The translations under genes were made by a program, and so were the position numbers. A stretch of DNA of 64,000 nucleotides, from positions 242,258 to 306,257 of the forward strand of contig NIVC01000909.1 in assembly GCA_002269645.1 (NCBI GenBank). The letters run 5' to 3'. The notes under the pieces are model-generated. The model did no database searches. It worked only from the letters and a program-made list of their open reading frames with translations, and was not told where the DNA came from. The DNA is from Macrostomum lignano. Taxonomy: Eukaryota. This document shows, in pieces, positions 2,916-57,039 of this stretch. Numbering within the stretch: the stretch's first letter is position 1; the number at the start of each line of letters is the position of its first letter.

Positions 2916-5229
2916 TACAGGATTTATTAACCCTACCATCACTGCCATTTCACACCCTGTTGATATAGTCTGTCATTTCGTATCATTGCTTAGAGTATCA
3001 ACTGAGTTGAACATTAAATTCTTTGATTAAATTATTAAATGAAATTGAATGAATCAACAACTTCTTGCTAATGAATTAAAAGTAGTAAGAAAACTTTTAA
3101 AGTCAATGAAAAAAACAAGATTATTTGTGATAATAAAAATAAAAAAAAGAAATTCAAATTTTGTTTTGCATTTCTAAAAAAATTAGAAACATATTAGAGA
3201 TTTATTTAGTAAAAGTTTAATAGATTTACATAATCTTTAACTTATTACTCAAATAGGGTCTCATTTTATGTATTAAACAGTCATTAACCATCTAGTTTTA
3301 TAGCAAAAAATGAATTTAGCCCAATTAGCAATTTTCAGAAAATATTAGTGGCGCTTTGATAGCGCACACTAATCGGAATTTCAATTCAACAGAATTAGTA
3401 GCACTAACAAAACATTAGTGGCGCTAGTGCCCATCATTGAACTTAGAAGATATGTCTAAAAATATATTAGGCAAAATCAAAAAATTGGTGGCAATGTTTT
3501 GAAAATTCATTTTTTGTGTTTTAAAAATGATAAAGCTATAAAATAAATTTTTTTGAGTTTAAAAAGTTAAAAAAATATCTATAAAAGCACAAATTATTTA
3601 TGTATAGCCTTATTTTTAATAAAATGATTTGTTAAAATAGTAAATTAAATTATGAATAAAATGACTCTCATATAATGATAGAAAAGCTCTAATAATTACA
3701 TTATACATGCCACAATGATATATATTTAGGTGTAATTTCATTGTTCTTTGTTGCTTAATAAGCCTATAGGAAGCATTTGATTTGGATACAAGGTTCAAAT
3801 TTTGTGGTGCCAATTTTAATCAAAAAAATTTGAAGGCTAAATATAGGCATACTATATACATTAATACTCTACAAGTTGATATTTAAATGAAAGAAAACAA
3901 CTTGAAGATTATTTGGCAACAAGGAATTAGCGATATATTTACTTTTAGACAAGATGTTTATTAGCAAACTTTGCACTTTAAATTAGTATGAATTTTTGCA
4001 AGTTTATATGGCTTTAGAAAAACTTGGAAATTCTTTATCTTTGTGAATAAAATAAAAATAAAACATGGAATCTTTTGTATTCTTGTATTTGTATAAGAAT
4101 ACGTTGTAAGTAGTAAAAAATAGCCTTCTCTTAGGTCTACATATCTTGTAATTAATTGTTTATAAATGAAAAAAGTGAAACCAAAAATTTTAAATTGGTC
4201 AACTTGAACTTGTTTATTTAGTGTTGTAAGGCATGAAAACAATAGTTTTTATCCAGAACTATTTTAAAGACTTATCTATCTTTCAGAAAGCTTTTTTAGA
4301 TATGCTACCTTCCATCAAATGTCCACAAATTTGTTTTACCATTTTATCCCACGTTTTTGGATTTTGCTGATAGCAAAAGTTATATAGGTTTAAGATTTTA
4401 TCTTGATTCTAAAATTTTGAGACAGCCTTTTTTAGTCATTTCAAAAAATTCTCACAATTTTGAAAATGGGCTTAGAATTTGAAAACAGTTATGAAATATT
4501 GGCTTCATTATAGAAAGTGTAAATTGTGAAAATGCACTATTTTTATCTATGGTCAGGAAGGTGTGCCATGTGCGCCACTGTTGCAACAAATTGCTAATAG
4601 TCAAATTTTTAACTGTGCACCATATGCCAAGCAAAAAAGTATATGGGCATTAAGAAAAAAGAAATGTGCACTTTATATTAGGCCTAGTATCTATTATATA
4701 GCAATTTAAATTTAAAAGATAAAAGAAAATAATAATCTTATTTTGAATTTTGGATTTTTTCTTATTTATTTTTTTTCTGGTGTGCATTTATAATTATTCA
4801 ATTTTTGTTCAGGTGTGCACCCAGCATGATTTAGACTATAGGCTGAGTTGGAAAAAAAGTAAGGTCAAGTCAAATTTTAGTCAAGGATGTATATAACAAC
4901 AAAATATTTCCCTTCCTATTACACAGTGGCCAGAAAGGGGAGAAGAAGTCAAAGAGCATATGTCTAGGTCCTAGCCCTTATAAAGTCACACCCTAGCTTG
5001 GTGTAAGGTACCAGCATTAGTTAAAAGCTAATCAGGATATATTGCCATTTGCCTTTGCCCTTGCCTGCGCAGTCTTTGCAGCTTGGGCAGCAGCACTTTA
5101 TATAGCAACTCAGAGCAGTGAGCCTCTAAGAGGAAGACGTGGCTAGCCAATCAAAGTCACCACCCACATAGTAGGTCAGAAGGCTACATCAGGTGCACCT
5201 TGCATAAAGTGTAGTGTTGGTCTTGCTGC

Positions 5230-5820
5230 CTAGACTGCTATACTTTCCAAACTCCAGTCTCCACACACAGAATGGCTGCATACAGAGTGTCCAGCTGCCT
5301 CTCTAAGGCATCTGCCAGGGTCTAAGTCTTGGCATTGTACAACAAGATTATTTGTCTCAATGGCTATTTGAAATAGCTGCACTCTGAGCCTATCACTCAG
5401 GGCCTTCGAATCAGGGTTGCAATAGTCTGAGCATAGTGTAAATAGGGTAAGCTGGGACAGCAGCTTTGCTAGATAGCCAATAGCTAATACCATGCAACTT
5501 TCTTGGCCAGCTTTGAAGCATTCTTTTTTATTTTGCACAATTCCTTGAAGGCACTTGTTTGTATCTTTCTGAAGTTTGACAAATGTATTTACCTCATTGA
5601 CCAAACTTGACAGCAGATTTTTTGGCACCATCATGACATTAGGCTCAGCAGGTACAAAAGAATTAGCAATTAAAATTTCTGACATTAGTAGTGATCTTGT
5701 AACTGCAAAGGATGAAGCTGTGGCAACTAGAGAGGCAGCAATAGCATTTGCCATTCTAAGGTAATAACCTTTCTCCTTCTGGCTGCTGCATTTAAGGATC
5801 TCTAATTTGGAAGTTCTTCC
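5230..5820 (-). CDS. Possible talin/HIP1-type I/LWEQ (THATCH) actin-binding-domain exon or pseudo-exon
   Basis: Open frame of ~195 codons. MANAIAASLVATASS, LLSSLVNEVNTFVKLQKDTNKCLQG and SQL..DSKALSDRL..TNNLVVQCQ line up by eye with talin SIAAATSALVKAAS, LISAARMVAAATNNLCEAANAAVQG and AQL..DSEAMKRL..SDNLVKAAQ. Splice partners not found; the region is CpG-poor. Confidence 0.4.
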   Translation of the reverse strand, partial: GRTSKLEILKCSSQKEKGYYLRMANAIAASLVATASSFAVTRSLLMSEILIANSFVPAEPNVMMVPKNLLSSLVNEVNTFVKLQKDTNKCLQGIVQNKKECFKAGQESCMVLAIGYLAKLLSQLTLFTLCSDYCNPDSKALSDRLRVQLFQIAIETNNLVVQCQDLDPGRCLREAAGHSVCSHSVCGDWSLESIAV

Positions 5821-7393
5821 TCATTATTGCTTATATCACTAGATGATTTGTGGCATAGAGAAAATTTTTGTCATTACTTTCATTATCTCTCTCATTGTTG
5901 TCAACATTGTTTTCCTATAAGACATTTAGCAGAAGCTGGAGCATAAAGAGCATTGGGCAACAAATGTTCAGTACTTTTGGAGTAAGAGTTTGCCAGTTTT
6001 AATGCACTGTCAGTGTTATAATCAGATGTTATACTTTGTGCCAAAAAAATTGTCAAAGTGCTAGACTTAAAAAAATTGTCCAACTGTGAAAACAATAGCC
6101 ATGTGTTTTTGGCTTTTTTGATTTACTAAAACATTTGTTCCTTGCATGGTGAGGGATGACAGTAAGTTTGTAATTCACTTTAATGCAATAATTAAACTTT
6201 TAATCATTTTTAAGTTTATAAAGAATGCCAAAAATGTTATAATATATATAATTATTTCTATATACAATTTTATATGTACTGATTCTTGGAACTATTGAAC
6301 TTTACACTTATAATAGAATAGAAATCCATAAGTCAGCAAAAAATATTGGCAGTGCTTTTATTACAGTCTATGCCAATACTTCTATGCTAATAATTCCTAG
6401 CTTAATATCATTGCAGCTTACTAGAATAACAATTCTACTTTATATAATATACAATGTATTGTAAACCAAAATTATGAAATGTATCCCCATGATACTTCAA
6501 TTAGCCTTAAACAAATTTATTTGTATGGTTGAGTCTTCAATAATATATACTCGTAGGAAGTTGAAAATGTATTTAAACTGACTAAAATGTATAATATCTT
6601 TCTCTTACTAGAGTCAAATATTATCTTTTTATCAAGTTTTTCTATTGTTTTTTTCTATCAATTATAGTTTCTAATCACTTCTCTACTTGACTTGGCTTAC
6701 TAATATCAAATATTTTTTTAATATAAATTATATTTTTTATAGCAAGGCATATATAACAATATATATATATATACCGCATATATGTAATATAACTCATATA
6801 CACACACATACACATGCATATATACACACATATAACATCAACACAAGATGACTGGCTTAATAAATTTATTATGATATGGCTAGGTGGTATTTGGCTGTTC
6901 CCACCATTGAGACAATCAGTAAGCTGCCTTGTGGATCTTACAAAGATCTTAGAAAGATCTTAGAAAGAGACAAAACATATTTTTTTGTTTGAACATGCTT
7001 TTCATTTAATGTAGAAAATTGCAAGCTTTGCACAGTTGCCAATCATTAATCTTGAGTTGTTTTCTAATAATAAATTTGTCAAAATCACTGAGGTTGCTGA
7101 AGGCAGGAGTCTTTTGAAGCTTAATGCAAGTAAACTGTGGTGCAAAATTTAACAGAATACAATTTTTCAAAAATATTTCAATTGACAATTGAGATCAAGA
7201 TTGAGATTTTGTCTGACCCTAATAGAATTTGATGTAGTTTTTTAAATGCTATACACAACATTATTTCTTGCCTTGCTATACTAAATTACTTTTTACTATA
7301 TTATGATAAATTGCATAATGCTAGCTAGTTATGCCATGGCAATTAAAAACAAATATAGTGAGATTTTTTTTATTTTTGGCAAAACTAGCAAAA

Positions 7394-7621
7394 CACTTTT
7401 GCCAAAGTTAAATGCACGCTTTAACCGATTCTACCACAGTTTACCATAGACATGTTGCTAGAAGGCGTATGCTTTTTCTATGGGCTGCCAAAATTGAAGT
7501 CACTTTTGCCAAAGTTAAATGCACGCTTTAACCGATTCTACCACAGTTTACCATAGACATGTTGCTGACAGGCGTACGCTTTTTCTATGGGCTGCCAAAA
7601 TTGAAGTCACTTTTGCCAAAG
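7394..7621. repeat. 107-bp tandem duplication (~2.1 copies)
   Basis: cacttttgccaaagttaaatgcacgc.. recurs at 7394 and 7501, with a partial third copy. Confidence 0.85.
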
Positions 7622-8033
7622 TCGAGCTTGAAAAGGTATTTAAAATGCTCCCTTCTCGGCTAGAAAGGCTTTGCTCAGGGGCGCATCAAGATTCTAGCTA
7701 TGCTCTATGGTCAGCCCTGCTGATCATGTCGGCAGGAACGGAGTTTTTCTATTTCTAGCTCCGGCGCGAAAAGCTTTTAATAGGCGTTAGTCCTAATATT
7801 TAATACATAGAACTTTGTATATATTGCTCCTTTCATTGCATTCATTAGGCCCCTAATTTATGATATATAAATGAGCTAAAGTAAGTATGTCTATGACTGT
7901 AATAGCAAAGGCTATCTATAGAGTCTGATGTATTTATATAACTCTAACTTGGCATTGTTATATAGGTTATACATAGGTGAAATATCATGTTTAAGCTCAT
8001 GGACACACATGCAACACAACTATCAAAACTCAG

Positions 8034-11000
8034 GTGTCGGAGTTGTGCGATTTCCTCAAATCGCTGGGCTGGTCCGGTGCCCAGACTGTGGACGCCTCAA
8101 CAGGGCCATGGCACGAACAGCTGACAAAAGTGTTGCCAGGCCTGTCTGTCCTGTCCCAGAAACCCATTCCACCAGCTGACATTGAATCTGTACTAAACGG
8201 AATTGTCTCCCTGCTAGTTGAAATGCCGCAATCCGCCATGCCTAACGCTGTTGACCTATTCTGCAAAGCTGTGTGCAGTCTGAACTTGAAACTGGCCCTA
8301 GCCGGTGGAGCTCAGGCTGAAGATGCCAAACAACAACAGCAGCAGCAGCAGCAGCAAGTCGCCAACGTTGCACCGTCAGTTCGAGAAGCCGCGGCCGCTT
8401 GCAAAGTGTCGCCGCTGCAGAATCTGTTTCGCATATTGCCTGAGAATTCTCCGCTAAGGTATACGGTCTATCTGGCTCTGGTTGAGACCGCGTCTGAGGA
8501 GAAACGAATGAATCAGGTGGTAACGGATCGGGTTCAGCTGCGCAACTGGATGAGCGACTGGCAGTGCAGCCCAGAGGATAGGAAGGTCAGACATTACGGT
8601 TTTAACACTGGAGCTCACGCCTGAGATAAGCGGTTCATAAATCTCACCTTTAAGATAAGCGGCCCTTAAATCTCACCTTTGAGATAAGCGGCCCTAAAAT
8701 CTCACCTTTGAGATAAGCGGCCCTAAAATCTCACCTTTGAGATAAGCGGCCCTTAAATCTCACCTTTGAGATAAGCGGCCCTTAATATCAACTCTGAGAT
8801 AAGCGGCCCTTAAATATCAACTCTGAGATAAGCAGCCCTTAAATCTCACCTTTGAGATAAGCAGATCCTAAATCTCACACCTGAGATAAGCGGTTCATAA
8901 ATCTCACCTCTAAGATAAGCGTGTCCTAAATCTCACCCCCTGAGATAAGCGGATCCTAAATCTCACCCATGAGATTAGCGGGTCTTGAATCTCACCCTCG
9001 AGATTAGCGAATCTTATATATCAACCCTGAGATTAGCGTGTCCTAAATCTCACCCCTGATATAAGCGGGACCTAAATCTCACCCCTGAGATTAGCGGGTC
9101 TTGAATCTCAACCCTGAGATAAGCGGGACCTAAATCTCACCCCTGAGATTAGCGGGTCTTGAATCTCACCCCTGATATAAGCGGGACCTAAATCTCACCC
9201 CTGAGATTAGCGGGTCTTGAATCTCAACCCTGAGATAAGCAGCTCTGAGGTCCCACCCTAACATAAGCGGCTCTGAGATCTCACCCCTGAGATAAGCGGC
9301 TCTGAGATCTCACCCGTGAGATAAGTGGTTCTAAAATCTCACCCCTGAGATTAGCGGCTCTGAGATCTCACTCCTGAAATAAGTGGCTTTAAAATCTCAC
9401 CTGAGATAAGTGGCTTTTAAAATCTCACCCCTGAGATAAGTGGTTCTAAAATCTCACCCCTGAGATAGGTGGTTCTAAAATCTTACCCCTTAGATTAGCG
9501 GCTCTGAGATCTCACTCCTGAAATAAGTGGCTTTAAAATCTCACCCCTGAGATAAGTGGCTTTTAAAATCTCACCCCTGAGATAAGTGGCCCTTGAATCT
9601 CACCCCTGACAGACCCTGTGGCGCCGGCTGCATTCGGCGCTAACGCGCAGCGGCGACACGGCGAGCGCCAACGCCTGTTTAATCGACCTGATGGACGCCT
9701 ACACCGAGCAGGACGCATCCAAAGCCAGAGACGAAGCCATTATGTGCATCGTGGCCACCCTATCAGACGATTCCGTCTACATCATGGACCATCTGCTCAG
9801 CTTGAAACCTATCCAGTTTCTCGAAGGCGAACTGATTCACGAACTATTGATGATCTTTGTTAGCGGCAGCCTGACCGACTATTTGACTTTTGCCGACAAA
9901 AATGCCGATTTTGTTCGCGGTTTAAACATCTGCGCCGAGTCCTGCATGAACAAGCTCAGGTTGTTGACCCTAATGCGGCTGGCTGAGAATAAGCTAGAGC
10001 TGGACTATGCACTGCTGCAGGATGAGCTCAAGATGGAGTCTGACGATCTGGAAGAGTTCATCATTGATGGTTTGTACTGCATGACTTCTTTGTTCGAAGC
10101 AGTTCTAACAAATGTTCTATCAGATGCGATTCTTAGAAGTATTTGATTCAGGGTGAATTTTGAAATATTTAATTATTAGTGAGATCCTTGGAAATGTTTA
10201 GTTTGGGGTGATTCCTGGAAATATTTCAATATGGTGATTCTTGGAAATATTTCAATATGGTGATTCCTGGAAATATTTCAATATGGTGATTCTTGGAAAT
10301 ATTTCAATATGGTGATTCCTGGAAATATTTCAATATGGTGATTCTTGGAAATATTTCAATATGGTGATTCTTGGAAATATTTCAATATGGTGATTCTTAG
10401 AAATATTTCAATATGGTCATTCTTGGAAATATTTCAATATGTTGATTCTTGGAAATATTTCAATATGGTCATTCTTAGAAAATATTTCAATATGGTCATT
10501 CTTAGAAAATATTTCAATATGGTCATTCTTAGAAAATATTTCAATATGGTGATTCTTGGAAATATTTCAATATGGTGATTCTTGGAAATATTTCAATATG
10601 GTCATTCTTGGAAATATTTCAATATGTTGATTCTTGAAAATATTTCAATATGGTCATTCTTAGAAAATATTTCAATATGGTCATTCTTAGAAAATATTTC
10701 AATATGGTGATTCTTGGAAATATTTCAATATGGTCATTCTTAGAAAATATTTCAATATGGTCATTCTTGGAAATATTTCAATATGTTGATTCTTGGAAAT
10801 ATTTCAATATGGTCATTCTTAGAAAATATTTCAATATGGTCATTCTTAGAAAATATTTCAATATGTTGATTCTTGGAAATATTTCAATATGGTGATTCTT
10901 AGAAATATTTCAATATGGTCATTCTTGGAAATATTTCAATATGGTGATTCTTAGAAATATTTCAATATGGTCATTCTTGGAAATATTTCAATATGTTGAT

Positions 11001-11699
11001 TCTTGGAAATATTTCAATATGGTCATTCTTAGAAAATATTTCAATATGGTCATTCTTAGAAAATATTTCAATATGTTGATTCTTGGAAATATTTCAATAT
11101 GGTGATTCTTGGAAATATTTCAATATGGTGATTCTTGGAAATATTTCAATATGGTGATTCTTAGAAATATTTCAATATGGTGATTCTTGGAAATATTTCA
11201 ATATGGTGATTCTTAGAAAAGTTTAGTTTTGGTCGATTTTGGGAAATAATTTAATAGGGCGATTCCATTCTTACCGATAGGGCGGTTTCTTAGAAACCTT
11301 TTATTTGTAAATCGATTCTAAGAACCATATTTTGTTATCGAGCCTTTAATTGTACAGTAAAGTGTGTTTGTGTTAAGGTTAACTAGGCCGTTAAACAGTA
11401 AACAATAAACAATAAACAGTAAACAATAAACAGTAAACAATACAACTCACCTATTTACCTTAGCCGCTCGCAAGGAGGCGGTATTCTGCAAACTAGACGA
11501 AGTGCAGCGCAAAGTGCTGGTCTACGGCACCACCCACCGGACATTCGGCCGGGCCCAGTGGACCTCGTTGCGGCACACCCTGCAACAATGGCACGACAAT
11601 CTGCAAGAGGTACAAACTAAACTGCAAGTCCTGGCCCCCGGTGAGCTGGATGAAATTCCGTCTACAACTGGACAGCCATCGACCGCTGTTAGCTCTTGA
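8034..11699 (+). CDS. EIF3M: Eukaryotic translation initiation factor 3 subunit M; coding exons 8034-8585, 9613-10069, 11464-11699; N-terminal ~13 aa not found
   Basis: Motifs ELCDFLKSLG, RYTVYLALV, LRNWMSDW, DHLLSLKPIQFLEGELIHELLMIFVSG, KLRLLTLM and THRTFGRAQW match eIF3m (PCI domain). GT-AG junctions are phase-compatible (0, then 1). Confidence 0.95.
8614..9610. repeat. 29-30-bp minisatellite filling an EIF3M intron
   Basis: Unit gagataagcggccctaaaatctcaccttt / ..ctcacccct; the last unit supplies the acceptor (ctcacccctgacag). Confidence 0.95.
10205..11220. repeat. 26-27-bp minisatellite in an EIF3M intron
   Basis: Unit ttcttggaaatatttcaatatggtga. Confidence 0.95.
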
Positions 11700-12009
11700 A
11701 TAACTGACTGCTGGGCCGAATTAATTAAAACAATTAACTGGTTTTGGTGTTTAAAGTTCATTCGTTCAAAGTTCAGAGTTCAAAGTTCAGATTGAACAAT
11801 AAATACAGTTTGTTTGTGGCCTCGTAGATGGCTCATGCGTTCTCGTGGAATTTATCCGTGTTTTGGCCTCCATTTCTTTGTTTGCTATATTTTTGTTAGT
11901 AGTATAAGCAAGCGTGTGTGTTCCGTTTTTATTCAAAAATTCTCTGTATTCAGGAAACCTTACGTTAGTATTGAATTACGAGTTATGCGTCTCAGGGAGT
12001 GACAGGCAA

Positions 12010-13190
12010 AGCATCCTGTCTGTAGCTGTAGTGACAGACTATTCATCCTTTCTGTAGCTGGAGTGACAGACTATTCATCCTGTCTGTAGCTGGAGTGACA
12101 GACTATTCATCCTGTCTGTAGCTGGAGTGACAGGCTATTCATCCTGTCTGTAGTTGTAGTGACAGGCTATTCATCCTGTCTGTAGCTGTAGTGACAGGCT
12201 ATTCATCCTGTCTGTAGCTGGAGTGACAGGCTATTCATCACTACACCCTGTCTGTAGCTGTAGTGACAGGACTATTCATCCTGTCTGTAGCTGGATTGAC
12301 GGGCTATTCATCCTGTCTGTAGCTGGAGTGACAGGCTATTCATCCTGTCTGTAGCTGGAGTGACAGGCTATTCATCCTGTCTGTAGCTGGAGTGACAGAC
12401 TATTCATCCTTTCTGTAGCTGGAGTGACAGACTATTCATCCTGTCTGTAGCTGGAGTGACAGGCTATTCATCCTGTCTGTAGCTGGAGTGACAGGCTATT
12501 CATCCTGTCTGTAGCTGGAGTGACAGGCTATTCATCCTGTAGGGGGAGTGACAGGCTAAGCATACTGTAGGGGGAGTGACAGGCTAAGCATCCTGTAGTG
12601 AGAGTGACAGGCTAAGAATTCTGTAGGGAGAGTGACAGGCTAAGCATCCTGTAGGGAGAGTGACAGACTAAGCATCCTATAGGGGGAGTGACAGACTAAG
12701 CATCCTGTAGGGGGAGTGACAGGCTAAGAATTCTGTAGGGAGAGTGACAGGCTAAGCATCCTGTAGGGAGAGTGACAGGCTAAGCATCCTGTAGGGAGAG
12801 TGACAGACTAAGCATCCTATAGGGGGAGTGACAGACTAAGCATCCTATAGGGGGAGTGACAGGCTAAGAATTCTGTAGGGAGAGTGACAGGCTAAGCATC
12901 CTGTAGGGAGAGTGACAGACTAAGCATCCTATAGGGGGAGTGACAGACTAAGCATCCTATAGGGGGAGTGACAGGCTAAGAATTCTGTAGGGAGAGTGAC
13001 AGACTAAGCATCCTATAGGGGGAGTGACAGACTAAGCATCCTGTAGGGGGAGTGACAGGCTAAGAATTCTGTAGGGAGAGTGACAGGCTAAGCATCCTGT
13101 AGGGAGAGTGACAGACTAAGCATCCTATAGGGGGAGTGACAGACTAAGCATCCTGTAGGGGGAGTGACAGGCTAAGAATTCTGTAGGAGC
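12010..13190. repeat. Two abutting related minisatellites (32-bp unit to ~12540, then 28-bp unit)
   Basis: gtgacagactattcatcctgtctgtagctgga, then gtgacaggctaagcatcctgtagggaga. Confidence 0.95.
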
Positions 13191-13288
13191 AGTCTTGTGT
13201 GTAGAAGCATCTTGAAGTATCTTGATTCTCATAAATACGACATTTCTGCTGAAGAGAAGGCTTCAGTTCTGTCCTTATCAAAGCGACA

Positions 13289-13849
13289 ATGTCCATGCCC
13301 AGTAGAAACAACGACAATGACAGTAACAACACTGAGCAGTCATTGAGCATGGTATCGGCTCCCGGTCTCGAAGAGGCCATGCGACGAAAAGAACGTCTGC
13401 AACGACTGCGCCAACGACAGTTGAACCCTGAATCAGCAGCGACAGTAGAGTCGGTGGACACTCCAGCTGGTATTCCGGTGGCCCCACCTGTTCTGCCAGT
13501 GTTTCGCAACTACAAAGCCGAGACTGACCATCTGGCAGCCGGACACCTGCCCGCTCCTGACTTGGTTGACGTTGAATCTCGTCTGGGCGATCAGTTGAAA
13601 GCGGCCGAGCCGAAGCCCTTGCTAACTGCCGATTCTGACATCACCGCTATTGCACCGAAGAAACCGGATTGGGATTTGAAGCGAGGCGCGGAACGGAGGC
13701 TGGCTAAACTCGAAAGGCGAACTCAGCGCGCTATCGCCGAGTTGCTAAGGGAACGATTGAAACAGCAGAAAGATCCGGAGAGCTTAGTGACAGCTGTGAA
13801 TGCTGCCGCTGATCAGGCTAGGATGGGTAGCTGGCAGGCTGCCAACTAG
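13289..13849 (+). CDS. CCDC12: Coiled-coil domain-containing protein 12 / Cwf18 spliceosome factor, single exon, 186 aa
   Basis: EEAMRRKERLQRLR, FRNYK, IAPKKPDWDLKRG and KLERRTQRAIAELLRERL are Cwf18-family motifs. Confidence 0.93.
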   Translation: MSMPSRNNDNDSNNTEQSLSMVSAPGLEEAMRRKERLQRLRQRQLNPESAATVESVDTPAGIPVAPPVLPVFRNYKAETDHLAAGHLPAPDLVDVESRLGDQLKAAEPKPLLTADSDITAIAPKKPDWDLKRGAERRLAKLERRTQRAIAELLRERLKQQKDPESLVTAVNAAADQARMGSWQAAN

Positions 13850-13904
13850 ACTGACTGGTTGGTGTTGTGGGAAATTTAGATTGCTCAGCAATCCAGCGTC
13901 AATT

Positions 13905-16455
13905 TGTAGCTAATACAGTCTCAAGGGGTGAGATTTTGTAGCTAATATAGTCTCATGGAGTGAGATTTTGTAGCTAATAGAGTCTCATGGGGTGAGATTT
14001 CGTAGCTAGTATAGTCTTATGGGGGGAGATTTTGTAGCTAATATAGTCTCATGGGGTAAGATTTTGTAGCTAATATAGTCTCATGGGGTGAGATTTTGTA
14101 GCTAATGTAGTCTCATGGAGTGAGATTTTGTAGCTAATATAGTCTCATGGGGTGAGATTTTGTAGCTAATATAGTCTCATGGAGTGAGATTTTGTAGCTA
14201 ATATAGTCTCATGGGGTGAGATTTCGTAGCTAATATAGTCTCATGAAGTGAGATTTTGTAGCTAATAGTGGTATAGGGTGAGATTTTTTAGCTAATATAA
14301 TTTCATGGCGTGAGATTTTGTAGCTAATATAGTCTCATGGGGTGAGATTTTGTAGCTAATATAGTCCATTGGGGTGAGATTTTGTAGCTAATAGTGTCTC
14401 ATGGGGTGAGATTTTGTAGCTAATATAGTCTCATGGGGTGAGATTTCGTAGCTAATATAGTCTCATGAAGTGAGATTTTGTAGCTAATAGTGGTATAGGG
14501 TGAGATTTTGTAGCTAATATAGTTTCATGGCGTGAGATTTTGTAGCTAATATAGTCTCATGGGGTGAGATTTTGTAGCTAATATAGTCCATTGGGGTGAG
14601 ATTTTGTAGCTAATAGTGTCTCATGGGGTGAGATTTTGTAGCTAATATAGTCCATTGGGGTGAGATTTTGTAGCTAATAGTGTCTCATGGGGTGAGATTT
14701 TGTAGCTAATATAGTCTCATGGGGCGAGATTTCGTAGCTAATATAGTCTCATGAAGTGAGATTTTGTAGCTAATAGTGGTATAGGGTGAGATTTTGTAGC
14801 TAATTTAGTCTCATGGGGTGAGATTTTGTAGCTAATATAGTCCATTGGGGTGAGATTTTGTAGCTAATAGTGTCTCATAGGGTGAGATTTTGTAGTTAAT
14901 ATAGTCTCATAGGGTGAGATTTTGTAGCTACTAGTGTCTCATGGGGTGAGATTTTGTAGCTAATATAGTCCATTGGGGTGAGATTTTGTAGCTAATAGTG
15001 TCTCATAGGGTGAGATTTTGTAGCTAATAGTGTCTCATGGGGTGAGATTTTGTAGCTAATAGTGTCTCATAGGGTGAGATTTTGTAGCTAATAGTGTCTC
15101 ATGGGGTGAGATTTTGTAGCTAATATAGTCTCATAGGGTGAGATTTTGTAGCTAATATAGTCTCATGGGGTGAGATTTTGTAGCTAATAGTGTCTCATAG
15201 GGTGAGATTTTGTAGTTAATATAGTCTCATAGGGTGAGATTTTGTAGCTAATAGAGTCTTATGGGGGGAAATTTTGTAGCTAATATAGTCTCATGGGGTG
15301 AGATTTTGTAGCTAATATAGTCTCATGGGGTGAGATTTTGTAGCTAATATAGTCCATTGGGGTGAGATTTTGTAGCTAATATAGTCTCATAGGGTGAGAT
15401 TTTGTAGCTAATAGAGTCTTATGGGGGGAGATTTTGTAGCTAATATAGTCTCATGGGGTGAGATTTTGTAGCTAATATAGTCTCATGGGGTGAGATTTTG
15501 TAGCTAATATAGTCCATTGGGGTGAGATTTTGTAGCTAATAGTGTCTCATGGGGTGAGATTTTGTAGCTAATATTGTCCATTGGGGTGAGATTTTGTAGC
15601 TAATAGTGTCTCATGGGGTGAGATTTTGTAGCTAATAGTGTCTCATAGGGTGAGATTTTGTAGCTAATAGTGTCTCATGGGGAGAGATTTTGTAGCTAAT
15701 ATAGTCTCACAGGGTGAGATTTTGTAGCTAATAGTGTCTCATGGGGTGAGATTTTGTAGCTAATATAGTCTCACAGGGTGAGATTTTGTAGTTAATATAG
15801 TCTCATAGGGTGAGATTTTGTAGCTAATAGTGTCTCATAGGGTGAGATTTTGTAGTTAATATAGTCTCATAGGGTGAGATTTTGTAGCTAATATAGTCTC
15901 ATGGGGTGAGATTTTGTAGCTAATATAGTCCATTGGGGTGAGATTTTGTAGCTAATATAGTCTCATGGGGTGAGATTTTGTAGCTAATATAGTCTCATGG
16001 AGTGAGATTTTGTAGCTAATATAGTCTCATGGGGTGAGATTTCGTAGCTAATATAGTCTCATGAAGTGAGATTTTGTAGCTAATAGTGGTATAGGGTGAG
16101 ATTTTTTAGCTAATATAATTTCATGGCGTGAGATTTTGTAGCTAATATAGTCTCATGGGGTGAGATTTTGTAGCTAATATAGTCCATTGGGGTGAGATTT
16201 TGTAGCTAATAGTGTCTCATAGGGTGAGATTTTGTAGTTAATATAGTCTCATAGGGTGAGATTTTGTAGCTAATAGAGTGTCATAGGGTGAGATTTTGTA
16301 GTTAATATAGTCTCATAGGGTGAGATTTTGTAGCTAATAGAGTGTCATAGGGTGAGATTTTGTAGCTAATATAGTCTCATGGGGTGAGATTTTGTAGCTA
16401 ATATAGTCTCATGGGGTGAGATTTTGTAGCTAATATAGTGTCATAGGGTAGGATT
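13905..16455. repeat. 32-bp minisatellite (~80 units)
   Basis: Unit ggggtgagattttgtagctaatatagtctcat. Confidence 0.95.
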
Positions 16456-16904
16456 TTATGAGTGAGGCTCTTTTGTTTGCTTTACTTAATGGGTTATAGT
16501 TTGAGTATTGTATTGAGTATAATTATATTTTTGTTTTAAGCGTAAGCACTATGCGTCTGTAAATATATATGTGTGAAACGCTGGACTTGATGTAACTGTC
16601 AAAATATTGTTAAAATTTCATAAAATTTCGGTCAGATGCCTTACTTAATTGTTAAAGTGCTTTAATAATAAATTGAAATTTATTTTTCTATGGGTTATGT
16701 GCTGTCGTCTGTTTGTTACATTAAATGTACATGCATACTTATTCTCAAAAAATGCTGTAATAAATGTTTAAAATATTTGTTGCTATGCAATTTTAATAGC
16801 TGCATAATGTGCGCGTCAAAGTGACAACAATGATAATACAACTTATCACGTTTTATTGATTTTTGTCGCTAAGTATCTCGAGTAATTTCCTGTCTGTGAA
16901 TCTG

Positions 16905-17965
16905 CCGTATCTGCATCTCACTCTCAGACTCGCCTATCTGCATCTCACTCTCAGACTCCCCTATCTGCATCTCACTCTGTTTCTCTCCTATCTGCATCTC
17001 ACTCTTTCTCTCCTATCTGCCTCTCACTCTGTGTCTCCCCTATCTACATCTCACTCTGTGTCTCCCATATCTGCATCTCACTCTGTGTCTCCCCTATCTG
17101 CATCTCACTCTGTGTCTCCCATATCTGCATCTAACTCTGTGTCTCCCATATCTACATCTCACTCTGTGTCTCCCATATCTACATCTCACTCTGTTTGTCT
17201 CCTATCTGCCTCTCACTCTGTGTCTCCCCTATCTACATCTCACTCTGTGTCTCCCCTATCTACATCTCACTCTGTGTCTCCCATATCTACATCTCACTCT
17301 GTGTCTCCCATATCTACATCTCACTCTGTTTCTCTCCTATCTGCCTCTCACTCTGTGTCTCCCCTATCTGCATCTCACTCTGTGTCTCCCCTATCTGCAT
17401 CTCACTCTGTGTCTCCCATATCTACATCTCACTCTGTGTCTCCCATATCTGCATCTCACTCTGTGTCTCCCATATCTACATCTCACTCTTTCTCTCCTAT
17501 CTGCATCTCACTCTGTGTCTCCCCTATCTGCATCTCACTCTGTGTCTCCCATATCTACATCTCACTCTGTGTCTCCCATATCTACATCTCACTCTGTTTC
17601 TCTCCTATCTGCCTCTCACTCTGTGTCTCCCCTATCTGCATCTCACTCTGTGTCTCCCCTATCTACATCTCACTCTGTGTCTCCCATATCTGCATCTCAC
17701 TCTGTGTCTCCCATATCTACATCTCACTCTGTGTCTCCCATATCTACATCTCACTCTGTGTCTCCCATATCTACATCTCACTCTGTTTCTCTCCTATCTG
17801 CCTCTCACTCTGTGTCTCCCCTATCTGCATCTCACTCTGTTTCTCCCCTATCTGCATCTCACTCTGTTTCTCTTCTATCTGCATCTCACTCTGTTTCTCT
17901 TCTATCTGCATCTCACTCTGTTTCTCTCCTTATCTGCATCTCACTCTCTCCTTACTGGATCTCAC
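16905..17965. repeat. 27-bp pyrimidine-rich minisatellite
   Basis: Unit ctgcatctcactctgtgtctcccctat. Confidence 0.95.
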
Positions 17966-18401
17966 TCTCCTTAACCGTTTAAAACCCTAGCTCGGTTTGC
18001 CTTACTTAATCTCCTGCTTCAGTGCAGTCTAAGCCTCTAAATAAAATCGATAAAACGTTTGTAAAATATAAAACTGAACTTGGTCCATATACGCGTTTAA
18101 AGCAAGTTAGTTGAAACAAATTTGGTAATTTAAGTAACTGCGCATCTCTAATTCCTTTGAGACACTGAATATTGTTGATGACAAAAGATTTAAAAGTTTT
18201 GTTCACGTTCTCACAGTCGTTTGTTGTTACCACATAGCCATGACGACTCCAGTCTTACATTTCAATCAAACTTGTCTTTTGTAATGAAGTTCGTAAGGAC
18301 TGAAAGACGATTTTCTAGGAAGCTATTTAAATGTACGAATTTGTGCCTGTCAGTTTGAATAAGGCAAGCCAGATTAAAAAATTATATTAGGTTGCCTAAA
18401 T

Positions 18402-22939
<4,538 letters not shown>

Positions 22940-23179
22940 GCTATGAGAAAACACCTGCAAACGGCAATTTCGCGGAATAATCACGAATTCTAAAGCCTAA
23001 TAATTGAAAACAGCACGTCTAATTGACAAAAGCTTTCCAGCTTGTTATTTTATGCAGCGCCTACTCAATATTGCCATTTAAATATTTTGACTATTTTCAC
23101 AAGGTCTTTGGTATTTTTTCTATTTGAAGTGAAAAAATTCGATTCATAATGGGTTCGATTAGCTATACAGATCTGCTGA

Positions 23180-24300
23180 AACCTGTTAGGCACATATTTT
23201 AGACTTACCTGTTAGTCACACCTGTAGATGCGTCACTCACCTGTTAGACACACCTGTAGATGCGTCACTCACCTGTTAGACACACCTGTAGATGCGTCAC
23301 TCACCTGTTAGACACACCTGTAGATGCGTCACTCACCTGTTAGACACACCTGTGGATGCGTCATTTACCTGTTAGAGACGCCTGTGGATGCGTCATTTAC
23401 CTGTTAGACACACCTGTGGATGCGTCATTTACCTGTTTGACACACCTGTGGATGCGTCATTTACCTGTTAGACACACCTGTAGATGCGTCACTCACCTGT
23501 TAGACACACCTGTAGATGCGTCACTCACCTGTTAGACACACCTGTAGATGCGTCACTCACCTGTTAGACACACCTGTAGATGCGTCACTCACCTGTTAGA
23601 CACACCTGTGGATGCGTCATTTACCTGTTAGAGACACCTGTGGATGCGTCATTTACCTGTTAGACACACCTGTGGATGCGTCACTCACCTGTTAGACACA
23701 CCTGTGGATGCGTCACTCACCTGTTAGACACACCTGTGGATGCGTCATTTACCTGTTAGACACACCTGTAGATGCGTCACTCACCTGTTACACACACATG
23801 TAGATGCGTCACTCACCTGTTAGACACACCTGTAGATGCGTCACTCACCTGTTAGACACACCTGTGGATGCGTCATTTACCTGTTAGAGACACCTGTGGA
23901 TGCGTCATTTACCTGTTAGACACACCTGTGGATGCGTCATTTACCTGTTTGACACACCTGTGGATGCGTCATTTACCTGTTAGACACACCTGTAGATGCG
24001 TCACTCACCTGTTAGACACACCTGTAGATGCGTCACTCACCTGTTAGACACACCTGTAGATGCGTCACTCACCTGTTAGACACACCTGTAGATGCGTCAT
24101 TTACCTGTTAGACACACCTGTAGATGCGTCACTCACCTGTTAGACACACATGTAGGTGCGTCACTCACCTGTTAGACACACCTGTAGATGCGTCACTCAC
24201 CTGTTAGACACACCTGTAGATGCGTCACTCACCTGTTAGACACACCTGTAGATGCGTCACTCACCTGTTAGACACACATGTAGATGCGTCACTCACCTGT
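23180..24300. repeat. 32-bp minisatellite (~35 units)
   Basis: Unit cacctgttagacacacctgtagatgcgtcact; the minus strand reads ctaacagGTGAGTgacgcatctacagGTGTGT. Confidence 0.95.
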
Positions 24301-40640: not shown

Positions 40641-40649
40641 TAATCTGGT

Positions 40650-41535: not shown

Positions 41536-47147
<5,612 letters not shown>

Positions 47148-54819: not shown

Positions 54820-54875
54820 AACCTAACCCTAACCCTAAATCTAACCAAAACCCTAACCTAAAACCTAAACCTAAA
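54820..54875. repeat. Degenerate telomere-like (CCCTAA)n tract
   Basis: aaacctaaccctaaccctaaatctaaccaaaaccctaacctaaaacctaaacctaa. Confidence 0.6.
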
Positions 54876-55256
54876 GTCTAGCGTCATGTTTCTAAATCAT
54901 AGTCACGAATAATCTCTCCGGAAGGATGAACCTCCCCGGCATCCATTTTTTAGCTCGCAGTTTCATTGTCCACTTTCCTCATCTCTGCTTTCTTCCTGGT
55001 TGTCGCACCTGCTCCCTCCCAAATTGTCCAGTTCTGTGGACCCGCGGGATCGCGCAGGATTTGCAATTAAAACAATCCCAGAATAAAAACTTCTTCTACT
55101 TGCCAGAAGTAAAAAAGTCAAAAAGTACTTTTCATTTTATTTTTCGTGTTTTCCTGCGTTCATTAGGGAGTTAGTCTAATAAACTCCTTGTACCCAAGTA
55201 GTCCTTGGATAAAAGTTGGCGCAGATTTGTTTATTTAGGAATGTATAAATCTCGCA

Positions 55257-55757
55257 TTAGTAGTTGATTTCAAACTTGACATCATTGCACTCATTGGTTG
55301 TTTTGCAGGAATCTAAAATTAAGAAATAAACAATTACTGTGTAGGTCATTGAAATTGCGGAGAAGTTGCATCTATTACACCTTTGTTTACCAGCAGTGCA
55401 GCAGATGCCAGTGGCAGCGCAGTGCCCCTTGCCACCATGGCAGGCGGTGGCGACGCGGTCGCAGCCGAGGACGCTCGCTGGCAGACGGCGGCAGGCGGCG
55501 GTGTCCGGGCCGAACCCGACGCGACATCCGCCGCGCGGGTGACAGCAGATGGCGCGGCCAAAGCAGCGGCCCCAGCCGTGAGAGCAGCTCAGACAGGGAC
55601 CGCTGACGCTGTGCCGCTCAAACTGTTTATGCTGCTCCAACTGTTCATTGGATCGCTTCTTCCCACCGGGCGCGCAGTTTTCCATGAAACAGGCGTTGCA
55701 GAAATAATCCGACAAAAATGCCAGAAACAGGAGAGTCGGAATGAGCTTTACGGACAT
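55257..55757 (-). CDS. Vasopressin/oxytocin-type preprohormone (signal peptide, nonapeptide CFMENCAPG-G-KKR, neurophysin), 140 aa; exons 55757-55391 and 55312-55257
   Basis: 22-aa signal peptide directly followed by C-X4-C-X2-G-GKKR; neurophysin with all 14 Cys (CLSC, GRCFG..ICC, GGC..C, C..C, GHCAATGICC, SC..EC); 78-nt phase-1 GT-AG intron after CCxx. Possible 46-nt 5'-UTR intron at 55769-55814. Confidence 0.93.
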   Translation of the reverse strand: MSVKLIPTLLFLAFLSDYFCNACFMENCAPGGKKRSNEQLEQHKQFERHSVSGPCLSCSHGWGRCFGRAICCHPRGGCRVGFGPDTAACRRLPASVLGCDRVATACHGGKGHCAATGICCTAGKQRCNRCNFSAISMTYTVIVYFLILDSCKTTNECNDVKFEINY

Positions 55758-57039
55758 GCTTATAGTTTCTGCGGTGGGACGATACTATCGATATGGACGA
55801 TCTGGTAAACTTACCTTCTGGAGGTGTAAATCAGTGCCGATTTTATAAGAAGCTACATTTAAATGAAAGCTAGCGCTGATGTTTTTTTTGTTTCGGGCGA
55901 ATTTCCTGACTGTCTTTTATTGACGCTTCGAATGCTGAGTCCGGTGGGTGGCCGGGGTTTCGAGTCCCCAAGGGGTTTGGCGGATTTAGTCTAGCGTTTG
56001 AAGCAGCAAATTTTTCCAAACGGGCAATTAATTGCATTCCAAAAATCATTGGCCGTCCTGCGGGACGTCTTCGAGCTCGGGTTTCGGTAGCGCAATTTCG
56101 ACAATTTTTTTCCTAATTTTTGTTTGGACAATAATCAAGCCTAAAGCCTGCACAATTTAGTTGGTGTGATCAAAAGCGAAAAAAATTGGCTTAACTTTAT
56201 TCGAACAATTTTCTGCCTTTAACTGCTAATTGGTTGCAAGATTTTGTTTTTTTAGCATTTCCCAAGCATGAACATCTTTTTAAAGAAAGATATTTTCTCT
56301 TTTTCTTTCTTCATATTTTTCCGACGTTGATGTGCGTAACTGGAAAATGTGTACTTTTGCATCACACTGACGTTTGGCCGGCATATAGATAACGACATAA
56401 AAATAGTCATTTTTAGCTATTTAGCCATAGCATCGACGCGGGTTTATTGGGAAGCGTCAGCAGACATCGTAATGTCTCTTTTTGGGAGAGTGTAGATCAG
56501 AAGCAACATTGCTTTCTCCAATTTCCTGCTTTCACTCATGCTTTTAGAATCGTGAGTCTTTATCGAGAAATTTTTTTACGTAATTCGATAAGTAGTTAAT
56601 CCCACATGTTTCAACAAAAGCTGCAGTTGTTGACGGAAATTTTCTTTTATGATTCTTTCTCTTTACTGCGCGTGTTGAACGTCATAGGCGAATAGGAAGG
56701 GCAATTTTGGGTGCTAATGGGCTGGATATATGCTGCTGTTTGCCAGCTTATTAGAGGCATGTAGCTGCATGTGGATCTAAACTACATCCGTAGCTAGTAG
56801 TCAGAGGTGTGTCTTTGCTAGACCAATGGAGATTGAGAAATTTTAGTCCTGTCTCGCTGTCATACAGCGCACAGGGTGCATACAGATCAAAGCCACTGAC
56901 TACATGTAATATCACTGATCATGTATACGCAGCACATGTACAGTATAGCACTGTGCCTTTGAAGTTTCCGGCTTTTAGAGTATCCGACAAGAGTTATGTA
57001 TATATGATGCCCTGCCATGCACTTCTGCCCCACTCTGGC

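What the first reader, a model, noticed from the sequence alone, without database searches (positions are those of the whole stretch)
55257..55757. Vasopressin/oxytocin-type precursor with a non-canonical nonapeptide, CFMENCAPG-NH2
Seen: a complete signal-peptide / nonapeptide / GKKR / neurophysin architecture. Established: Pro7 is nearly invariant in this family (CYFQNCPRG, CYIQNCPLG, CFIRNCPKG). Here position 7 is Ala and position 8 is Pro, with Met3 and an acidic Glu4. The phase-1 intron after CCxx matches the position of vertebrate AVP/OXT intron 2, supporting orthology, while the intron before CLxC is absent. Flatworms were long thought to lack this system; a VP/OT-type peptide (platytocin) has been reported from a marine flatworm, so novelty of this exact peptide must be checked.
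Basis: partly seen in the sequence, partly recalled or inferred. Interest (0 to 1): 0.88.

Follow-up and report, generated by a model that had tools for sequence, protein, structure and literature searches.

The report
Second vasopressin/oxytocin-type gene in Macrostomum
The window, from the flatworm Macrostomum lignano, holds an intact but unannotated extra copy of the vasopressin/oxytocin hormone gene that would make an unusual peptide (CFMENCAPG); it is a new member of a family already reported in this species, not a new kind of system.

Summary
On the minus strand, 55757..55257 encodes a signal peptide, CFMENCAPG, a GKKR processing site and a 14-cysteine neurophysin. It matches Pfam PF00184 (E 1.4e-12), bovine neurophysin by sequence, and only neurophysins by predicted fold.

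The 166-aa ORF reads through a 78-nt in-frame GT..AG intron (55390..55313). The true product is 140 aa from two exons.

The window is Macrostomum lignano assembly GCA_002269645.1, contig NIVC01000909.1 (100% identity over 20.5 kb). No matching protein or paper text was found, so the gene appears unannotated and the peptide unpublished.

The family is not new here. Kobayashi et al. 2022 reported VP/OT precursors in M. lignano. Three of their four accessions are the canonical three-exon Mlig003431 genes (CFVANCPPG).

The window gene is a divergent paralog:
- Its closest relative (83-87% in the neurophysin, dN/dS 0.27) is the Mlig008727 group, whose models have no hormone.
- It lacks intron 1.
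- It carries Pro7Ala, Met3 and Glu4.
- It replaces the neurophysin glutamate (bovine Glu47) that salt-bridges the hormone with leucine.

Ala7 has a precedent in Saccoglossus (CFISDCARG). Expression, processing and a receptor are untested. Verdict: new member of a known kind, moderate interest.

The parts
55841..55847 (-). TATAAAA box-like motif, 90 nt upstream of the ATG (candidate core promoter)
   Evidence: Read from the sequence; coordinates checked. Consensus match only; function not shown.
55692..55757 (-). Start codon and predicted 22-aa signal peptide, MSVKLIPTLLFLAFLSDYFCNA
   Evidence: It has a basic n-region, a hydrophobic core and small residues at -3/-1 (C-N-A). It aligns with the signal peptides of 26 other precursors, with Cys1 of the hormone directly after it. 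AlphaFold models residues 5-21 as a helix. No SignalP run was possible.
55665..55691 (-). Predicted hormone CFMENCAPG (Cys1-Cys6 ring, Asn5, Ala7, Pro8, Gly9)
   Evidence: Homologous context in the canonical M. lignano gene: YFCNACFMENCAPGGKKRS against HLCELCFVANCPPGGKKRS.
55653..55664 (-). GKKR: glycine amidation donor plus basic cleavage site
   Evidence: The same GKKR follows platytocin (P0005, P0058) and M. lignano CFVANCPPG (P0011, P0054, P0057).
55596..55652 (-). 19-aa linker SNEQLEQHKQFERHSVSGP, spanning the place where intron 1 lies in the paralogs
   Evidence: DNA homology to the Mlig008727 exon starts at window 55606. That exon begins at a cag| acceptor at L001 20175/20176. The canonical gene has intron 1 after GKKRSFPG.
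55391..55595 (-). Neurophysin domain, first 12 of its 14 cysteines (end of coding exon 1; the last base is the first base of the split Asp codon)
   Evidence: Pfam PF00184 matches residues 55-122. The PDB alignment to bovine neurophysin II covers residues 54-133.
55313..55390 (-). 78-nt phase-1 intron (GTAAAC...TTTTAG), in frame and free of stops, so the ORF reads through it
   Evidence: Splicing restores ...GICCTA|DSCKTTNEC..., matching M. lignano P0001 ...GICCTADSCETTNEC.... The canonical gene has an intron at the same position.
55257..55312 (-). Coding exon 2: DSCKTTNECNDVKFEINY plus the TAA stop (last two neurophysin cysteines)
55230..55235 (-). AATAAA polyadenylation-signal motif, 22 nt after the stop codon
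   Evidence: Read from the sequence; coordinates checked. Consensus match only.

Best explanation
This is an intact, unannotated, lineage-specific paralog of the vasopressin/oxytocin-type (platytocin-type) neuropeptide precursor gene of Macrostomum lignano. It lies on contig NIVC01000909.1 at about 297,514-298,014, minus strand.

Shown by the sequence and searches:
- It is a two-exon gene encoding a 140-aa preprohormone: signal peptide, CFMENCAPG, GKKR, and a neurophysin with all 14 cysteines.
- It belongs with the Mlig008727 neurophysin genes and is distinct from the canonical Mlig003431 genes (CFVANCPPG).
- Relative to the canonical gene it has lost intron 1. Its peptide differs at V3M, A4E and P7A. 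The neurophysin residue that normally salt-bridges the hormone's amino group is Leu instead of Glu.

Inferred by analogy with the family:
- The precursor enters the secretory pathway and the signal peptide is cut before Cys23.
- A prohormone convertase cuts after KKR, a carboxypeptidase trims the basic residues, and the exposed Gly is converted to a C-terminal amide. The result would be disulfide-cyclised CFMENCAPG-NH2, released from neurosecretory cells to act on a G-protein-coupled receptor.
- Hormone-neurophysin packaging is probably weaker or different than in canonical precursors, because the Glu47 equivalent is missing.
For: Family membership:
- Pfam PF00184, E 1.4e-12, above the curated cut-off.
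- Bovine neurophysin II/I by sequence, E 6e-8 to 2e-5.
- AlphaFold2 model with mean pLDDT 76. Its ten significant Foldseek PDB matches are all bovine neurophysins, probability 1.00, TM 0.54-0.72 normalised to the target.
- 50 phmmer hits; almost all sequences read are VP/OT precursors or fragments of them.

Species: 100% identity over 20,561 nt to M. lignano NIVC01000909.1.

Paralogy:
- The nearest protein is the M. lignano PAA80927.1 / A0A1I8IKP1 cluster, 81-83% identical over the alignment (87% Cys55-Cys131).
- The canonical genes PAA50340.1, PAA85176.1 and PAA46766.1 are 40% identical in the neurophysin.
- The N-terminal 28 aa are 54% identical to the canonical exon 1, including GGKKRS and a Cys at -3.

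Integrity:
- 14 Cys, GT..AG intron at the conserved position, TATAAAA and AATAAA motifs.
- dN/dS 0.27 (dS 0.36) against the L001 paralog over 88 codons.

Not annotated or published:
- No matching protein in the 5.8-billion-sequence collection.
- The ORF is not on record.
- No paper text contains CFMENCAPG.
Against: - No expression, splicing, processing or peptide data could be obtained with these tools.
- The gene is missing from the annotation of its own assembly.
- Kobayashi et al. found no clear VP/OT-type receptor in M. lignano (PMC8896804).
- The peptide departs from the family at three positions. In 53 relatives, Met3 and Glu4 were never seen and Ala7 was seen once.
- The conserved neurophysin Glu is Leu.
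- The closest relatives, the Mlig008727 models, have no detectable hormone exon within 20 kb upstream. That branch may be drifting away from hormone function.
- The dN/dS covers only the neurophysin part and averages over both lineages.
Confidence: 0.7

Rival explanations
1. It is a silent or decaying duplicate. A recent copy, partly processed since intron 1 is missing, landed in a repeat-rich region. It still has an open frame but is not expressed or no longer makes a working hormone.
For: - It is not in the assembly's annotation or any protein collection.
- It has lost one intron relative to both paralog groups.
- It has lost the near-invariant Pro7 and the Glu47 equivalent.
- It is surrounded by minisatellites, a degenerate telomere-like repeat and a 63-nt inverted repeat.
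- No receptor has been reported in this species.
Against: - No stop or frameshift in 140 codons, and all 16 structural cysteines are kept.
- The splice sites of the retained intron are intact.
- dN/dS is 0.27 with dS 0.36, so the neurophysin was under constraint for most of the time since the split.
- The processing site is perfectly kept.
- TATA and poly(A) motifs are in the right places.
- The Glu-to-Leu change is shared with the Mlig008727 copies, so it predates the split and is not recent decay.
Confidence: 0.18
2. It is a neofunctionalised secreted product. The gene is expressed, but the active part is not a classical VP/OT ligand. Either the neurophysin-like domain is the functional protein, as in the hormone-less Mlig008727 models, or the peptide acts on a non-VP/OT receptor or on a mating partner, outside the nervous system.
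For: - The closest relatives are annotated as neurophysin-only proteins with no hormone exon found.
- The hormone-binding Glu is lost in the whole branch.
- The ring residues (Met3, Glu4) and the tail (Ala7) have changed.
- No canonical receptor was reported in M. lignano.
- By general knowledge, VP/OT-type peptides have been recruited to non-neuronal secretions in other animals, such as cone-snail venom conopressins. P0065 is a Conus conopressin/conophysin.
Against: - The signal peptide, hormone and GKKR layout is kept exactly, which is not expected if only the neurophysin mattered.
- Cys1, Phe2, Asn5, Cys6 and Gly9 are all canonical.
- There are no tissue data either way.
Confidence: 0.12

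Closest known systems
Canonical M. lignano VP/OT-type precursors Mlig003431g1-g4 (PAA50340.1/PAA63765.1, PAA85176.1, PAA46766.1; UniProt entries named 'Oxytocin'), cited by Kobayashi et al. 2022
   Same: Same species. Same layout of signal peptide, nonapeptide, GKKR and 14-Cys neurophysin. Very similar hormone context (C-x-x-C-F-x-x-N-C-x-P-G-G-K-K-R-S). Same phase-1 intron two residues after the second CC pair.
   Different: The peptide is CFVANCPPG against CFMENCAPG. The neurophysins are only 40% identical. The canonical gene has three coding exons with a >1-kb intron 1; the window gene has none there.
M. lignano Mlig008727g1 group (PAA80927.1; A0A1I8IKP1, A0A1I8I0Z5, A0A1I8I2P0)
   Same: Nearest relatives: 83-87% identical neurophysin, grouped together in 100% of bootstraps, and sharing CRRLPA(S/K)VLGC with Leu in place of Glu47. 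Same intron 2 position. An Ank-repeat kinase gene sits next door at both loci.
   Different: Those models start at the intron-1 acceptor or use implausible far-upstream exons. They have no signal peptide or hormone, and I found no hormone exon in the 20 kb upstream. The window gene carries the hormone in the same exon. Its orientation relative to the kinase gene is inverted.
Platytocin precursor of polyclad flatworms (Stylochoplana pusilla BCO16375.1, Notocomplana humilis BCO16377.1; CFIRNCPPG-NH2)
   Same: Same phylum and same architecture. Same GKKR site, Phe2, Asn5 and Pro8-Gly9. It is the best non-Macrostomum hit in the exhaustive search, E 9.4e-11.
   Different: I3M, R4E and P7A. About 38% neurophysin identity. 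Platytocin's neurophysin keeps the C-x-x-E-N motif. Platytocin has a demonstrated receptor and antidiuretic and egg-laying effects; nothing is known for the window peptide.
Saccoglossus kowalevskii vasotocin-type peptide CFISDCARG-NH2 (NP_001161489.1)
   Same: The only other retrieved family member with Ala at position 7. The review describes this as unusual.
   Different: It is a deuterostome. Position 8 is Arg rather than Pro, and position 5 is Asp. Its neurophysin keeps the Glu. The changes arose independently.
Bovine neurophysin II-oxytocin complex (PDB 1NPO) and neurophysin I/II structures
   Same: Same fold and the same 14-Cys pattern.
   Different: Glu47, which salt-bridges the hormone (Yuasa et al. 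1993, title as cited in PMC3932059), aligns with Leu. Neighbouring pocket residues also differ: CQEENYLPSPC against CRRLPASVLGC, and FGP against FGR.
Octopus cephalotocin/octopressin gene pair
   Same: A precedent for a lineage-specific duplication giving two VP/OT-type genes in an invertebrate, with intron loss (review PMC7181382).
   Different: The Octopus genes have single coding exons and both peptides keep Pro7. Their receptors are known.

Membership tests
VP/OT-type neuropeptide precursor (hormone + neurophysin) | N-terminal signal peptide directly followed by the hormone | tested here: met
   A 22-aa hydrophobic leader with C-N-A at -3..-1. Cys1 of the hormone aligns with Cys1 of 26 relatives. 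Residues 5-21 are modelled as a helix. This is a heuristic check; no dedicated signal-peptide predictor was available.
VP/OT-type neuropeptide precursor (hormone + neurophysin) | Nonapeptide with Cys1 and Cys6 (six-residue disulfide ring) and a three-residue tail | tested here: met
   CFMENCAPG. Phe2 and Asn5 are the commonest residues among 53 relatives.
VP/OT-type neuropeptide precursor (hormone + neurophysin) | Pro at position 7 (typical, not universal) | tested here: not met
   Ala (GCG) at position 7 and Pro at position 8. 52 of 53 relatives have Pro7; Saccoglossus has Ala7 and is accepted as a member.
VP/OT-type neuropeptide precursor (hormone + neurophysin) | Gly9 followed by Gly-(Lys/Arg)n, the amidation and cleavage site | tested here: met
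   G-GKKR, identical to the sites in platytocin and the canonical M. lignano precursors.
VP/OT-type neuropeptide precursor (hormone + neurophysin) | Neurophysin domain with 14 conserved cysteines (Pfam PF00184) | tested here: met
   PF00184 at 48.7 bits against a cut-off of 27.2. 14 Cys from residue 55 on; 13 lie in invariant columns of the 28-sequence alignment and Cys99 in a nearly invariant one.
VP/OT-type neuropeptide precursor (hormone + neurophysin) | Neurophysin fold | tested here: met
   The ten Foldseek PDB matches with E <= 0.001 are all bovine neurophysins, probability 1.00. The next match has E 1.1. The model has mean pLDDT 76.
VP/OT-type neuropeptide precursor (hormone + neurophysin) | Hormone-binding glutamate of neurophysin (bovine Glu47, C-x-x-E-N motif) | tested here: not met
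   It aligns with Leu (CRRLPASVLGC) in the window gene and in the Mlig008727 group. Most of the 28 aligned relatives have Glu there. This is a functional residue, not a membership criterion.
VP/OT-type neuropeptide precursor (hormone + neurophysin) | Three coding exons with conserved intron positions | tested here: inconclusive
   Intron 2 is present at the conserved place, shared with both M. lignano paralog groups. Intron 1 is absent. The Octopus genes are intronless and still members. The vertebrate intron position was not checked with tools.
VP/OT-type neuropeptide precursor (hormone + neurophysin) | Expressed, processed to a cyclic amidated peptide, and secreted | not testable with these tools
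   No transcriptome or peptidome of M. lignano is reachable. The spliced product could not be looked up and the ORF is not on record.
VP/OT-type neuropeptide precursor (hormone + neurophysin) | Cognate VP/OT-type G-protein-coupled receptor in the same genome | not tested
Kobayashi et al. report no clear receptor ortholog in M. lignano.
Platytocin (orthologue of the polyclad peptide) | Peptide CFIRNCPPG, or a one-to-one orthologous precursor | tested here: not met
   The peptide differs at three of nine positions. The canonical Mlig003431 genes (CFVANCPPG) are the accessions the authors listed as the M. lignano VP/vasotocin precursors. The neighbour-joining tree does not resolve the deeper relations (47% bootstrap for the Macrostomum groups together, 2.5% for all flatworms).

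The most novel reading that the evidence does not exclude
Macrostomum evolved a second, fast-diverging VP/OT-derived ligand branch: this CFMENCAPG gene plus the hormone-less Mlig008727 neurophysin genes. This branch has uncoupled from classical hormone-neurophysin binding (Glu47 to Leu) and from the classical receptor. The peptide would then signal through a non-canonical receptor, or act outside the nervous system, for example in reproduction, in a species reported to lack a VP/OT receptor.
Probability: 0.15. Interest if true: 0.6.

Novelty: new member of a known kind. Interest (0 to 1): 0.38.

Why it matters
Platyhelminths were listed as having lost VP/OT signalling until 2022 (PMC7181382 against PMC8896804). 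M. lignano is the genetically tractable flatworm model, with transgenesis and RNAi.

An extra, unannotated ligand gene would show four things:
1. The M. lignano VP/OT complement is larger than reported and includes at least three kinds of genes.
2. Invertebrate lineage-specific duplication of this family is not confined to cephalopods, nematodes and tardigrades.
3. Nature has made a Pro7Ala / Pro8 variant plus a Glu47-less neurophysin. This is a ready-made test of which residues are needed for receptor activation and for hormone-neurophysin packaging.
4. The question of what the ligands act on becomes sharper, because no receptor was found in this species.

It also flags an annotation gap: PAA80927.1 has a doubtful 5' end, and this locus has no gene model.

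Tried and rejected
- **A different Macrostomum species.** The best protein hit was only 81-82% identical, which suggested another species. I rejected this: the window is 100% identical over 20.5 kb to M. lignano NIVC01000909.1, so the 81% hit is a paralog.
- **Exact-product look-ups.** The 166-aa ORF, a LINE ORF and a zinc-finger ORF are not on record. P0001 is not on record either.
- **Hormone exon for the Mlig008727 paralog.** A strict motif search over the 30-kb locus L001 and a relaxed search over the 20 kb upstream of the neurophysin exon found nothing.
- **Other features at the locus.** The antisense and overlapping ORFs at 55298..55808 have no Pfam match and are by-products of a GC-rich exon. 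The bacterial promoter/terminator scan is at background level and irrelevant for a eukaryote. There are no tRNA genes and no Rfam families in the window.
- **Age of the duplication.** A neighbour-joining tree of the neurophysin domain gave only 47% bootstrap for the Macrostomum groups together and 2.5% for all flatworms together.
- **PAA87831.1.** This is the fourth accession in Kobayashi et al. I could not identify it. It did not appear in any of my searches, so it is not a product of this locus.
- **The Kobayashi supplement.** It is not held as text, so I could not see whether their figures show M. lignano peptide sequences.

Full report
**1. What is in the sequence.**

The minus strand carries an ATG-to-TAA ORF at exactly 55757..55257, 166 aa long. 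Its parts are:
- A 22-aa hydrophobic leader, MSVKLIPTLLFLAFLSDYFCNA.
- CFMENCAPG.
- GKKR.
- A 19-aa linker.
- A cysteine-rich domain.

The C-terminal third of the ORF is not coding. The closest database protein reads ...GICCTADSCETTNECKDVKFEVKR, while the window ORF reads ...GICCTAGKQRCNRCNFSAISMTYTVIVYFLILDSCKTTNECNDVKFEINY. The extra 26 codons are a 78-nt intron, GTAAAC...TTTTAG, at 55390..55313. It is phase 1, in frame, and has no stop codon.

The real CDS is 55757..55391 plus 55312..55257. It gives 140 aa with exactly 14 cysteines from Cys55 onward. A TATAAAA motif lies 90 nt upstream of the ATG (55847..55841), and an AATAAA lies 22 nt after the stop (55235..55230). These two are consensus matches only.

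**2. It is a neurophysin-type hormone precursor, beyond chance.**

- Pfam Hormone_5 (PF00184) matches residues 55-122 with E 1.4e-12 and 48.7 bits, against a curated cut-off of 27.2.
- Bovine neurophysin II (1npo/2bn2) matches by sequence at E 5.9e-8.
- An AlphaFold2 model built on a 28-sequence alignment has mean pLDDT 76. Its ten Foldseek PDB matches with E <= 0.001 are all bovine neurophysins, at probability 1.00. The next match has E 1.1.
- An exhaustive phmmer search of 1.84 billion representatives gave 50 hits at E <= 1e-3. Almost all the sequences I read are VP/OT-type precursors or fragments of them, with C-[FYL]-[ILV]-x-N-C-P-x-G-G-K-R.
- The hormone-plus-cleavage motif occurs once in six frames of the whole window.
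- Overlapping and antisense ORFs have no Pfam match.

**3. Whose genome.**

An intronless cwf18 gene in the window (13289..13849) is an exact product of M. lignano assembly GCA_002269645.1, contig NIVC01000909.1. The 20,561 nt fetched around it are 100% identical to window 3289..23849.

Window position 1 therefore corresponds to contig position 242,258, and the gene lies at about 297,514-298,014.

**4. Relation to what is already known in this species.**

Kobayashi et al. 2022 (PMC8896804) described platytocin in polyclads. They stated that database searches revealed VP/vasotocin precursor genes otherwise only in M. lignano (PAA85176.1, PAA50340.1, PAA46766.1, PAA87831.1). They found no clear receptor ortholog there.

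I identified three of those accessions as Mlig003431g2, g1 and g4. All encode CFVANCPPG followed by GKKR. Platytocin itself (BCO16375.1, BCO16377.1) is CFIRNCPPG plus GKKR. I could not identify PAA87831.1.

The window gene is none of these. Its nearest relative is a second M. lignano group: Mlig008727g1 (PAA80927.1) and three UniProt entries. These are 81-83% identical over the alignment and 87% identical between Cys55 and Cys131. The two group together in 100% of bootstraps.

The canonical genes are 40% identical to the window gene in the neurophysin. They join the window/Mlig008727 pair in only 47% of bootstraps, so the age of the duplication is unresolved.

The N-terminus is clearly homologous to the canonical exon 1. 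YFCNACFMENCAPGGKKRS aligns with HLCELCFVANCPPGGKKRS, at 54% identity over 28 aa. Against that background the window peptide differs by V3M, A4E and P7A. Its Pro8 is the second proline of the flatworm Pro-Pro-Gly tail.

**5. Gene structure.**

The canonical M. lignano gene has three coding exons:
- Exon 1 ends after GKKRSFPG.
- Intron 1 is longer than 1 kb.
- Exon 2 ends at ...GVCCDL.
- Exon 3 starts with DSC.

The Mlig008727 locus (L001) has a cag| acceptor just before GSHVPATNTINGSCLSC. It has the same intron after CCTA.

The window gene shares intron 2 but has no intron 1. The linker runs straight from GKKR into the neurophysin. DNA homology to the L001 exon begins at window 55606, consistent with a precise intron loss.

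Three coding exons are the norm for the family, and the intronless Octopus genes are a known exception (PMC7181382). That the intron 2 position equals vertebrate intron 2 (neurophysin residues 76/77, two residues after the second CC pair) is my recollection. I did not test it.

**6. Is it a live gene?**

For:
- No stops or frameshifts, and all cysteines are kept.
- The cleavage and amidation site is perfect, and the splice sites are intact.
- Promoter-like and poly(A) motifs are in place.
- dN/dS is 0.27 (dN 0.096, dS 0.355, 88 codons) against the L001 paralog.

Against:
- No protein in the 5.8-billion-sequence collection corresponds to it, and the ORF is not on record. The assembly's annotators did not call it.
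- Its nearest relatives are modelled without any hormone. I found no hormone exon in 20 kb upstream of the L001 neurophysin exon. That exon is preceded by a tandem repeat, and the annotated 5' exons encode nothing like a signal peptide.
- Expression could not be tested with the available tools.

**7. How unusual is the peptide?**

Among 53 genuine nonapeptides retrieved here, 52 have Pro7, none has Met3 and none has Glu4. This is a non-independent sample of representatives.

The one Ala7 case is Saccoglossus CFISDCARG. The Odekunle and Elphick review already singles it out as unusual. Ala7 is therefore rare but precedented.

The exact strings CFMENCAPG and CFVANCPPG occur in no searchable paper text. 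Other literature searches on Macrostomum with vasopressin, oxytocin or neurophysin turned up nothing further. The supplement of the 2022 paper is not held.

**8.

In bovine neurophysin, Glu47 forms the salt bridge to the hormone. The basis is the title of Yuasa et al. 1993, as cited in PMC3932059.

The HMMER alignment to 1npo places CRRLPASVLGC against CQEENYLPSPC, so Glu47 aligns with Leu. In the 28-sequence alignment most relatives have Glu in that column. The window gene and the Mlig008727 proteins have Leu, and they also have FGR in place of FGP.

The change is shared by the whole branch, so it predates the split and was followed by purifying selection. I infer that hormone-neurophysin packaging is altered in this branch. 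This fits with some members apparently having no hormone at all.

**9. Mechanism proposed.**

Shown: the gene, its architecture, its family, its paralogy and its differences.

Inferred by analogy with the family:
- Co-translational entry into the ER and signal cleavage before Cys23.
- Formation of the Cys1-Cys6 disulfide.
- Convertase cleavage at KKR, carboxypeptidase trimming, and amidation of Gly9 using Gly10.
- Storage in dense-core vesicles and release.
- Action on a GPCR.

In polyclads the homologous system controls water balance and egg laying. Nothing is known for this peptide.

My estimates are about 0.7 that this reading is right overall, and near certainty for family membership. The rivals are a silent or decaying duplicate (0.18) and a neofunctionalised secreted product (0.12).

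**10. Verdict.**

The interest is moderate rather than high, for three reasons:
- The family is already reported in this very species.
- A canonical copy exists elsewhere in the genome.
- Ala7 has a precedent.

What is new:
- An unannotated third kind of VP/OT-type gene in M. lignano.
- An unpublished peptide.
- The loss of intron 1.
- The loss of the hormone-binding glutamate.

Noticed in passing
L001 (M. lignano NIVC01000558.1) 10001-20561; neurophysin exon 20176-20418 and 20506-20559: The annotated gene PAA80927.1 (Mlig008727g1) joins a neurophysin exon to 5' exons about 10 kb upstream. Those exons encode no signal peptide or hormone. The UniProt models of the same group start exactly at the intron-1 acceptor. 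A tandem repeat of about 66 nt lies directly upstream (19300-19970). The model's 5' end looks wrong, or the gene really is hormone-less.
   Followed up: partly
window 55593-55260 (-), residues 89-99; also P0001-P0004: The neurophysin glutamate that salt-bridges the hormone in mammals (bovine Glu47) is Leu in this gene and in all Mlig008727-type proteins. The FGP motif is FGR in both M. lignano groups.
   Followed up: partly
window 49780-52331 (+): An ankyrin-repeat plus protein-kinase gene lies 3 kb from the hormone gene. Paralogs of it flank the Mlig008727 neurophysin gene in L001: 82-87% identity to L001 21836-26203, and 98% over 175 nt to the gene ending at L001 172. The kinase/neurophysin neighbourhood was therefore duplicated as a block, with the neurophysin gene inverted in the window.
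   Followed up: partly
window 8614-24301, 29631-40645, 45199-45515, 47621-49088, 52576-53390, 57032-57185: The density of minisatellite arrays with 19-32-nt units is very high. The largest has about 348 copies of a 23-mer over 8 kb at 32664-40645, with strong GC skew. A related 22-mer family also occurs in L001.
   Followed up: no
window 54825-54880: A short degenerate telomere-like (CCCTAA)n tract lies about 380 nt downstream of the gene's poly(A) signal. It is interstitial, not at a contig end.
   Followed up: no
window 54402-54464 and 54533-54595: A 63-nt inverted repeat, 90% complementary with a 68-nt spacer, looks like a small hairpin or MITE-like element between the hormone gene and the minisatellite at 52576-53390.
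   Followed up: no
window 53890-54060 (-): A stretch resembles a tRNA-derived SINE head (…GGATCGGAGAATCGAACCCCCGACC…). ARAGORN and Rfam report nothing in the window.
   Followed up: partly
window 25283-25768 (-), 26709-27758 (-): Two ORFs match endonuclease/reverse-transcriptase (Exo_endo_phos_2) and RNase H. They are probably fragments of a LINE-type retroelement. The 349-aa ORF is not on record as a gene product.
   Followed up: partly
window 13289-13849 (+); window 46668-47147 (+): An intronless cwf18 splicing-factor gene is identical to an annotated M. lignano gene; I used it to place the window. A C2H2 zinc-finger ORF is not on record in the collection.
   Followed up: yes
window 55814-55770 (-): Between the TATA-like box and the ATG there is a GTAAGT...pyrimidine-rich...CAG stretch of about 45 nt, ending 12 nt before the ATG. 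It could be a small 5'-UTR intron or a trans-splice acceptor.
   Followed up: no
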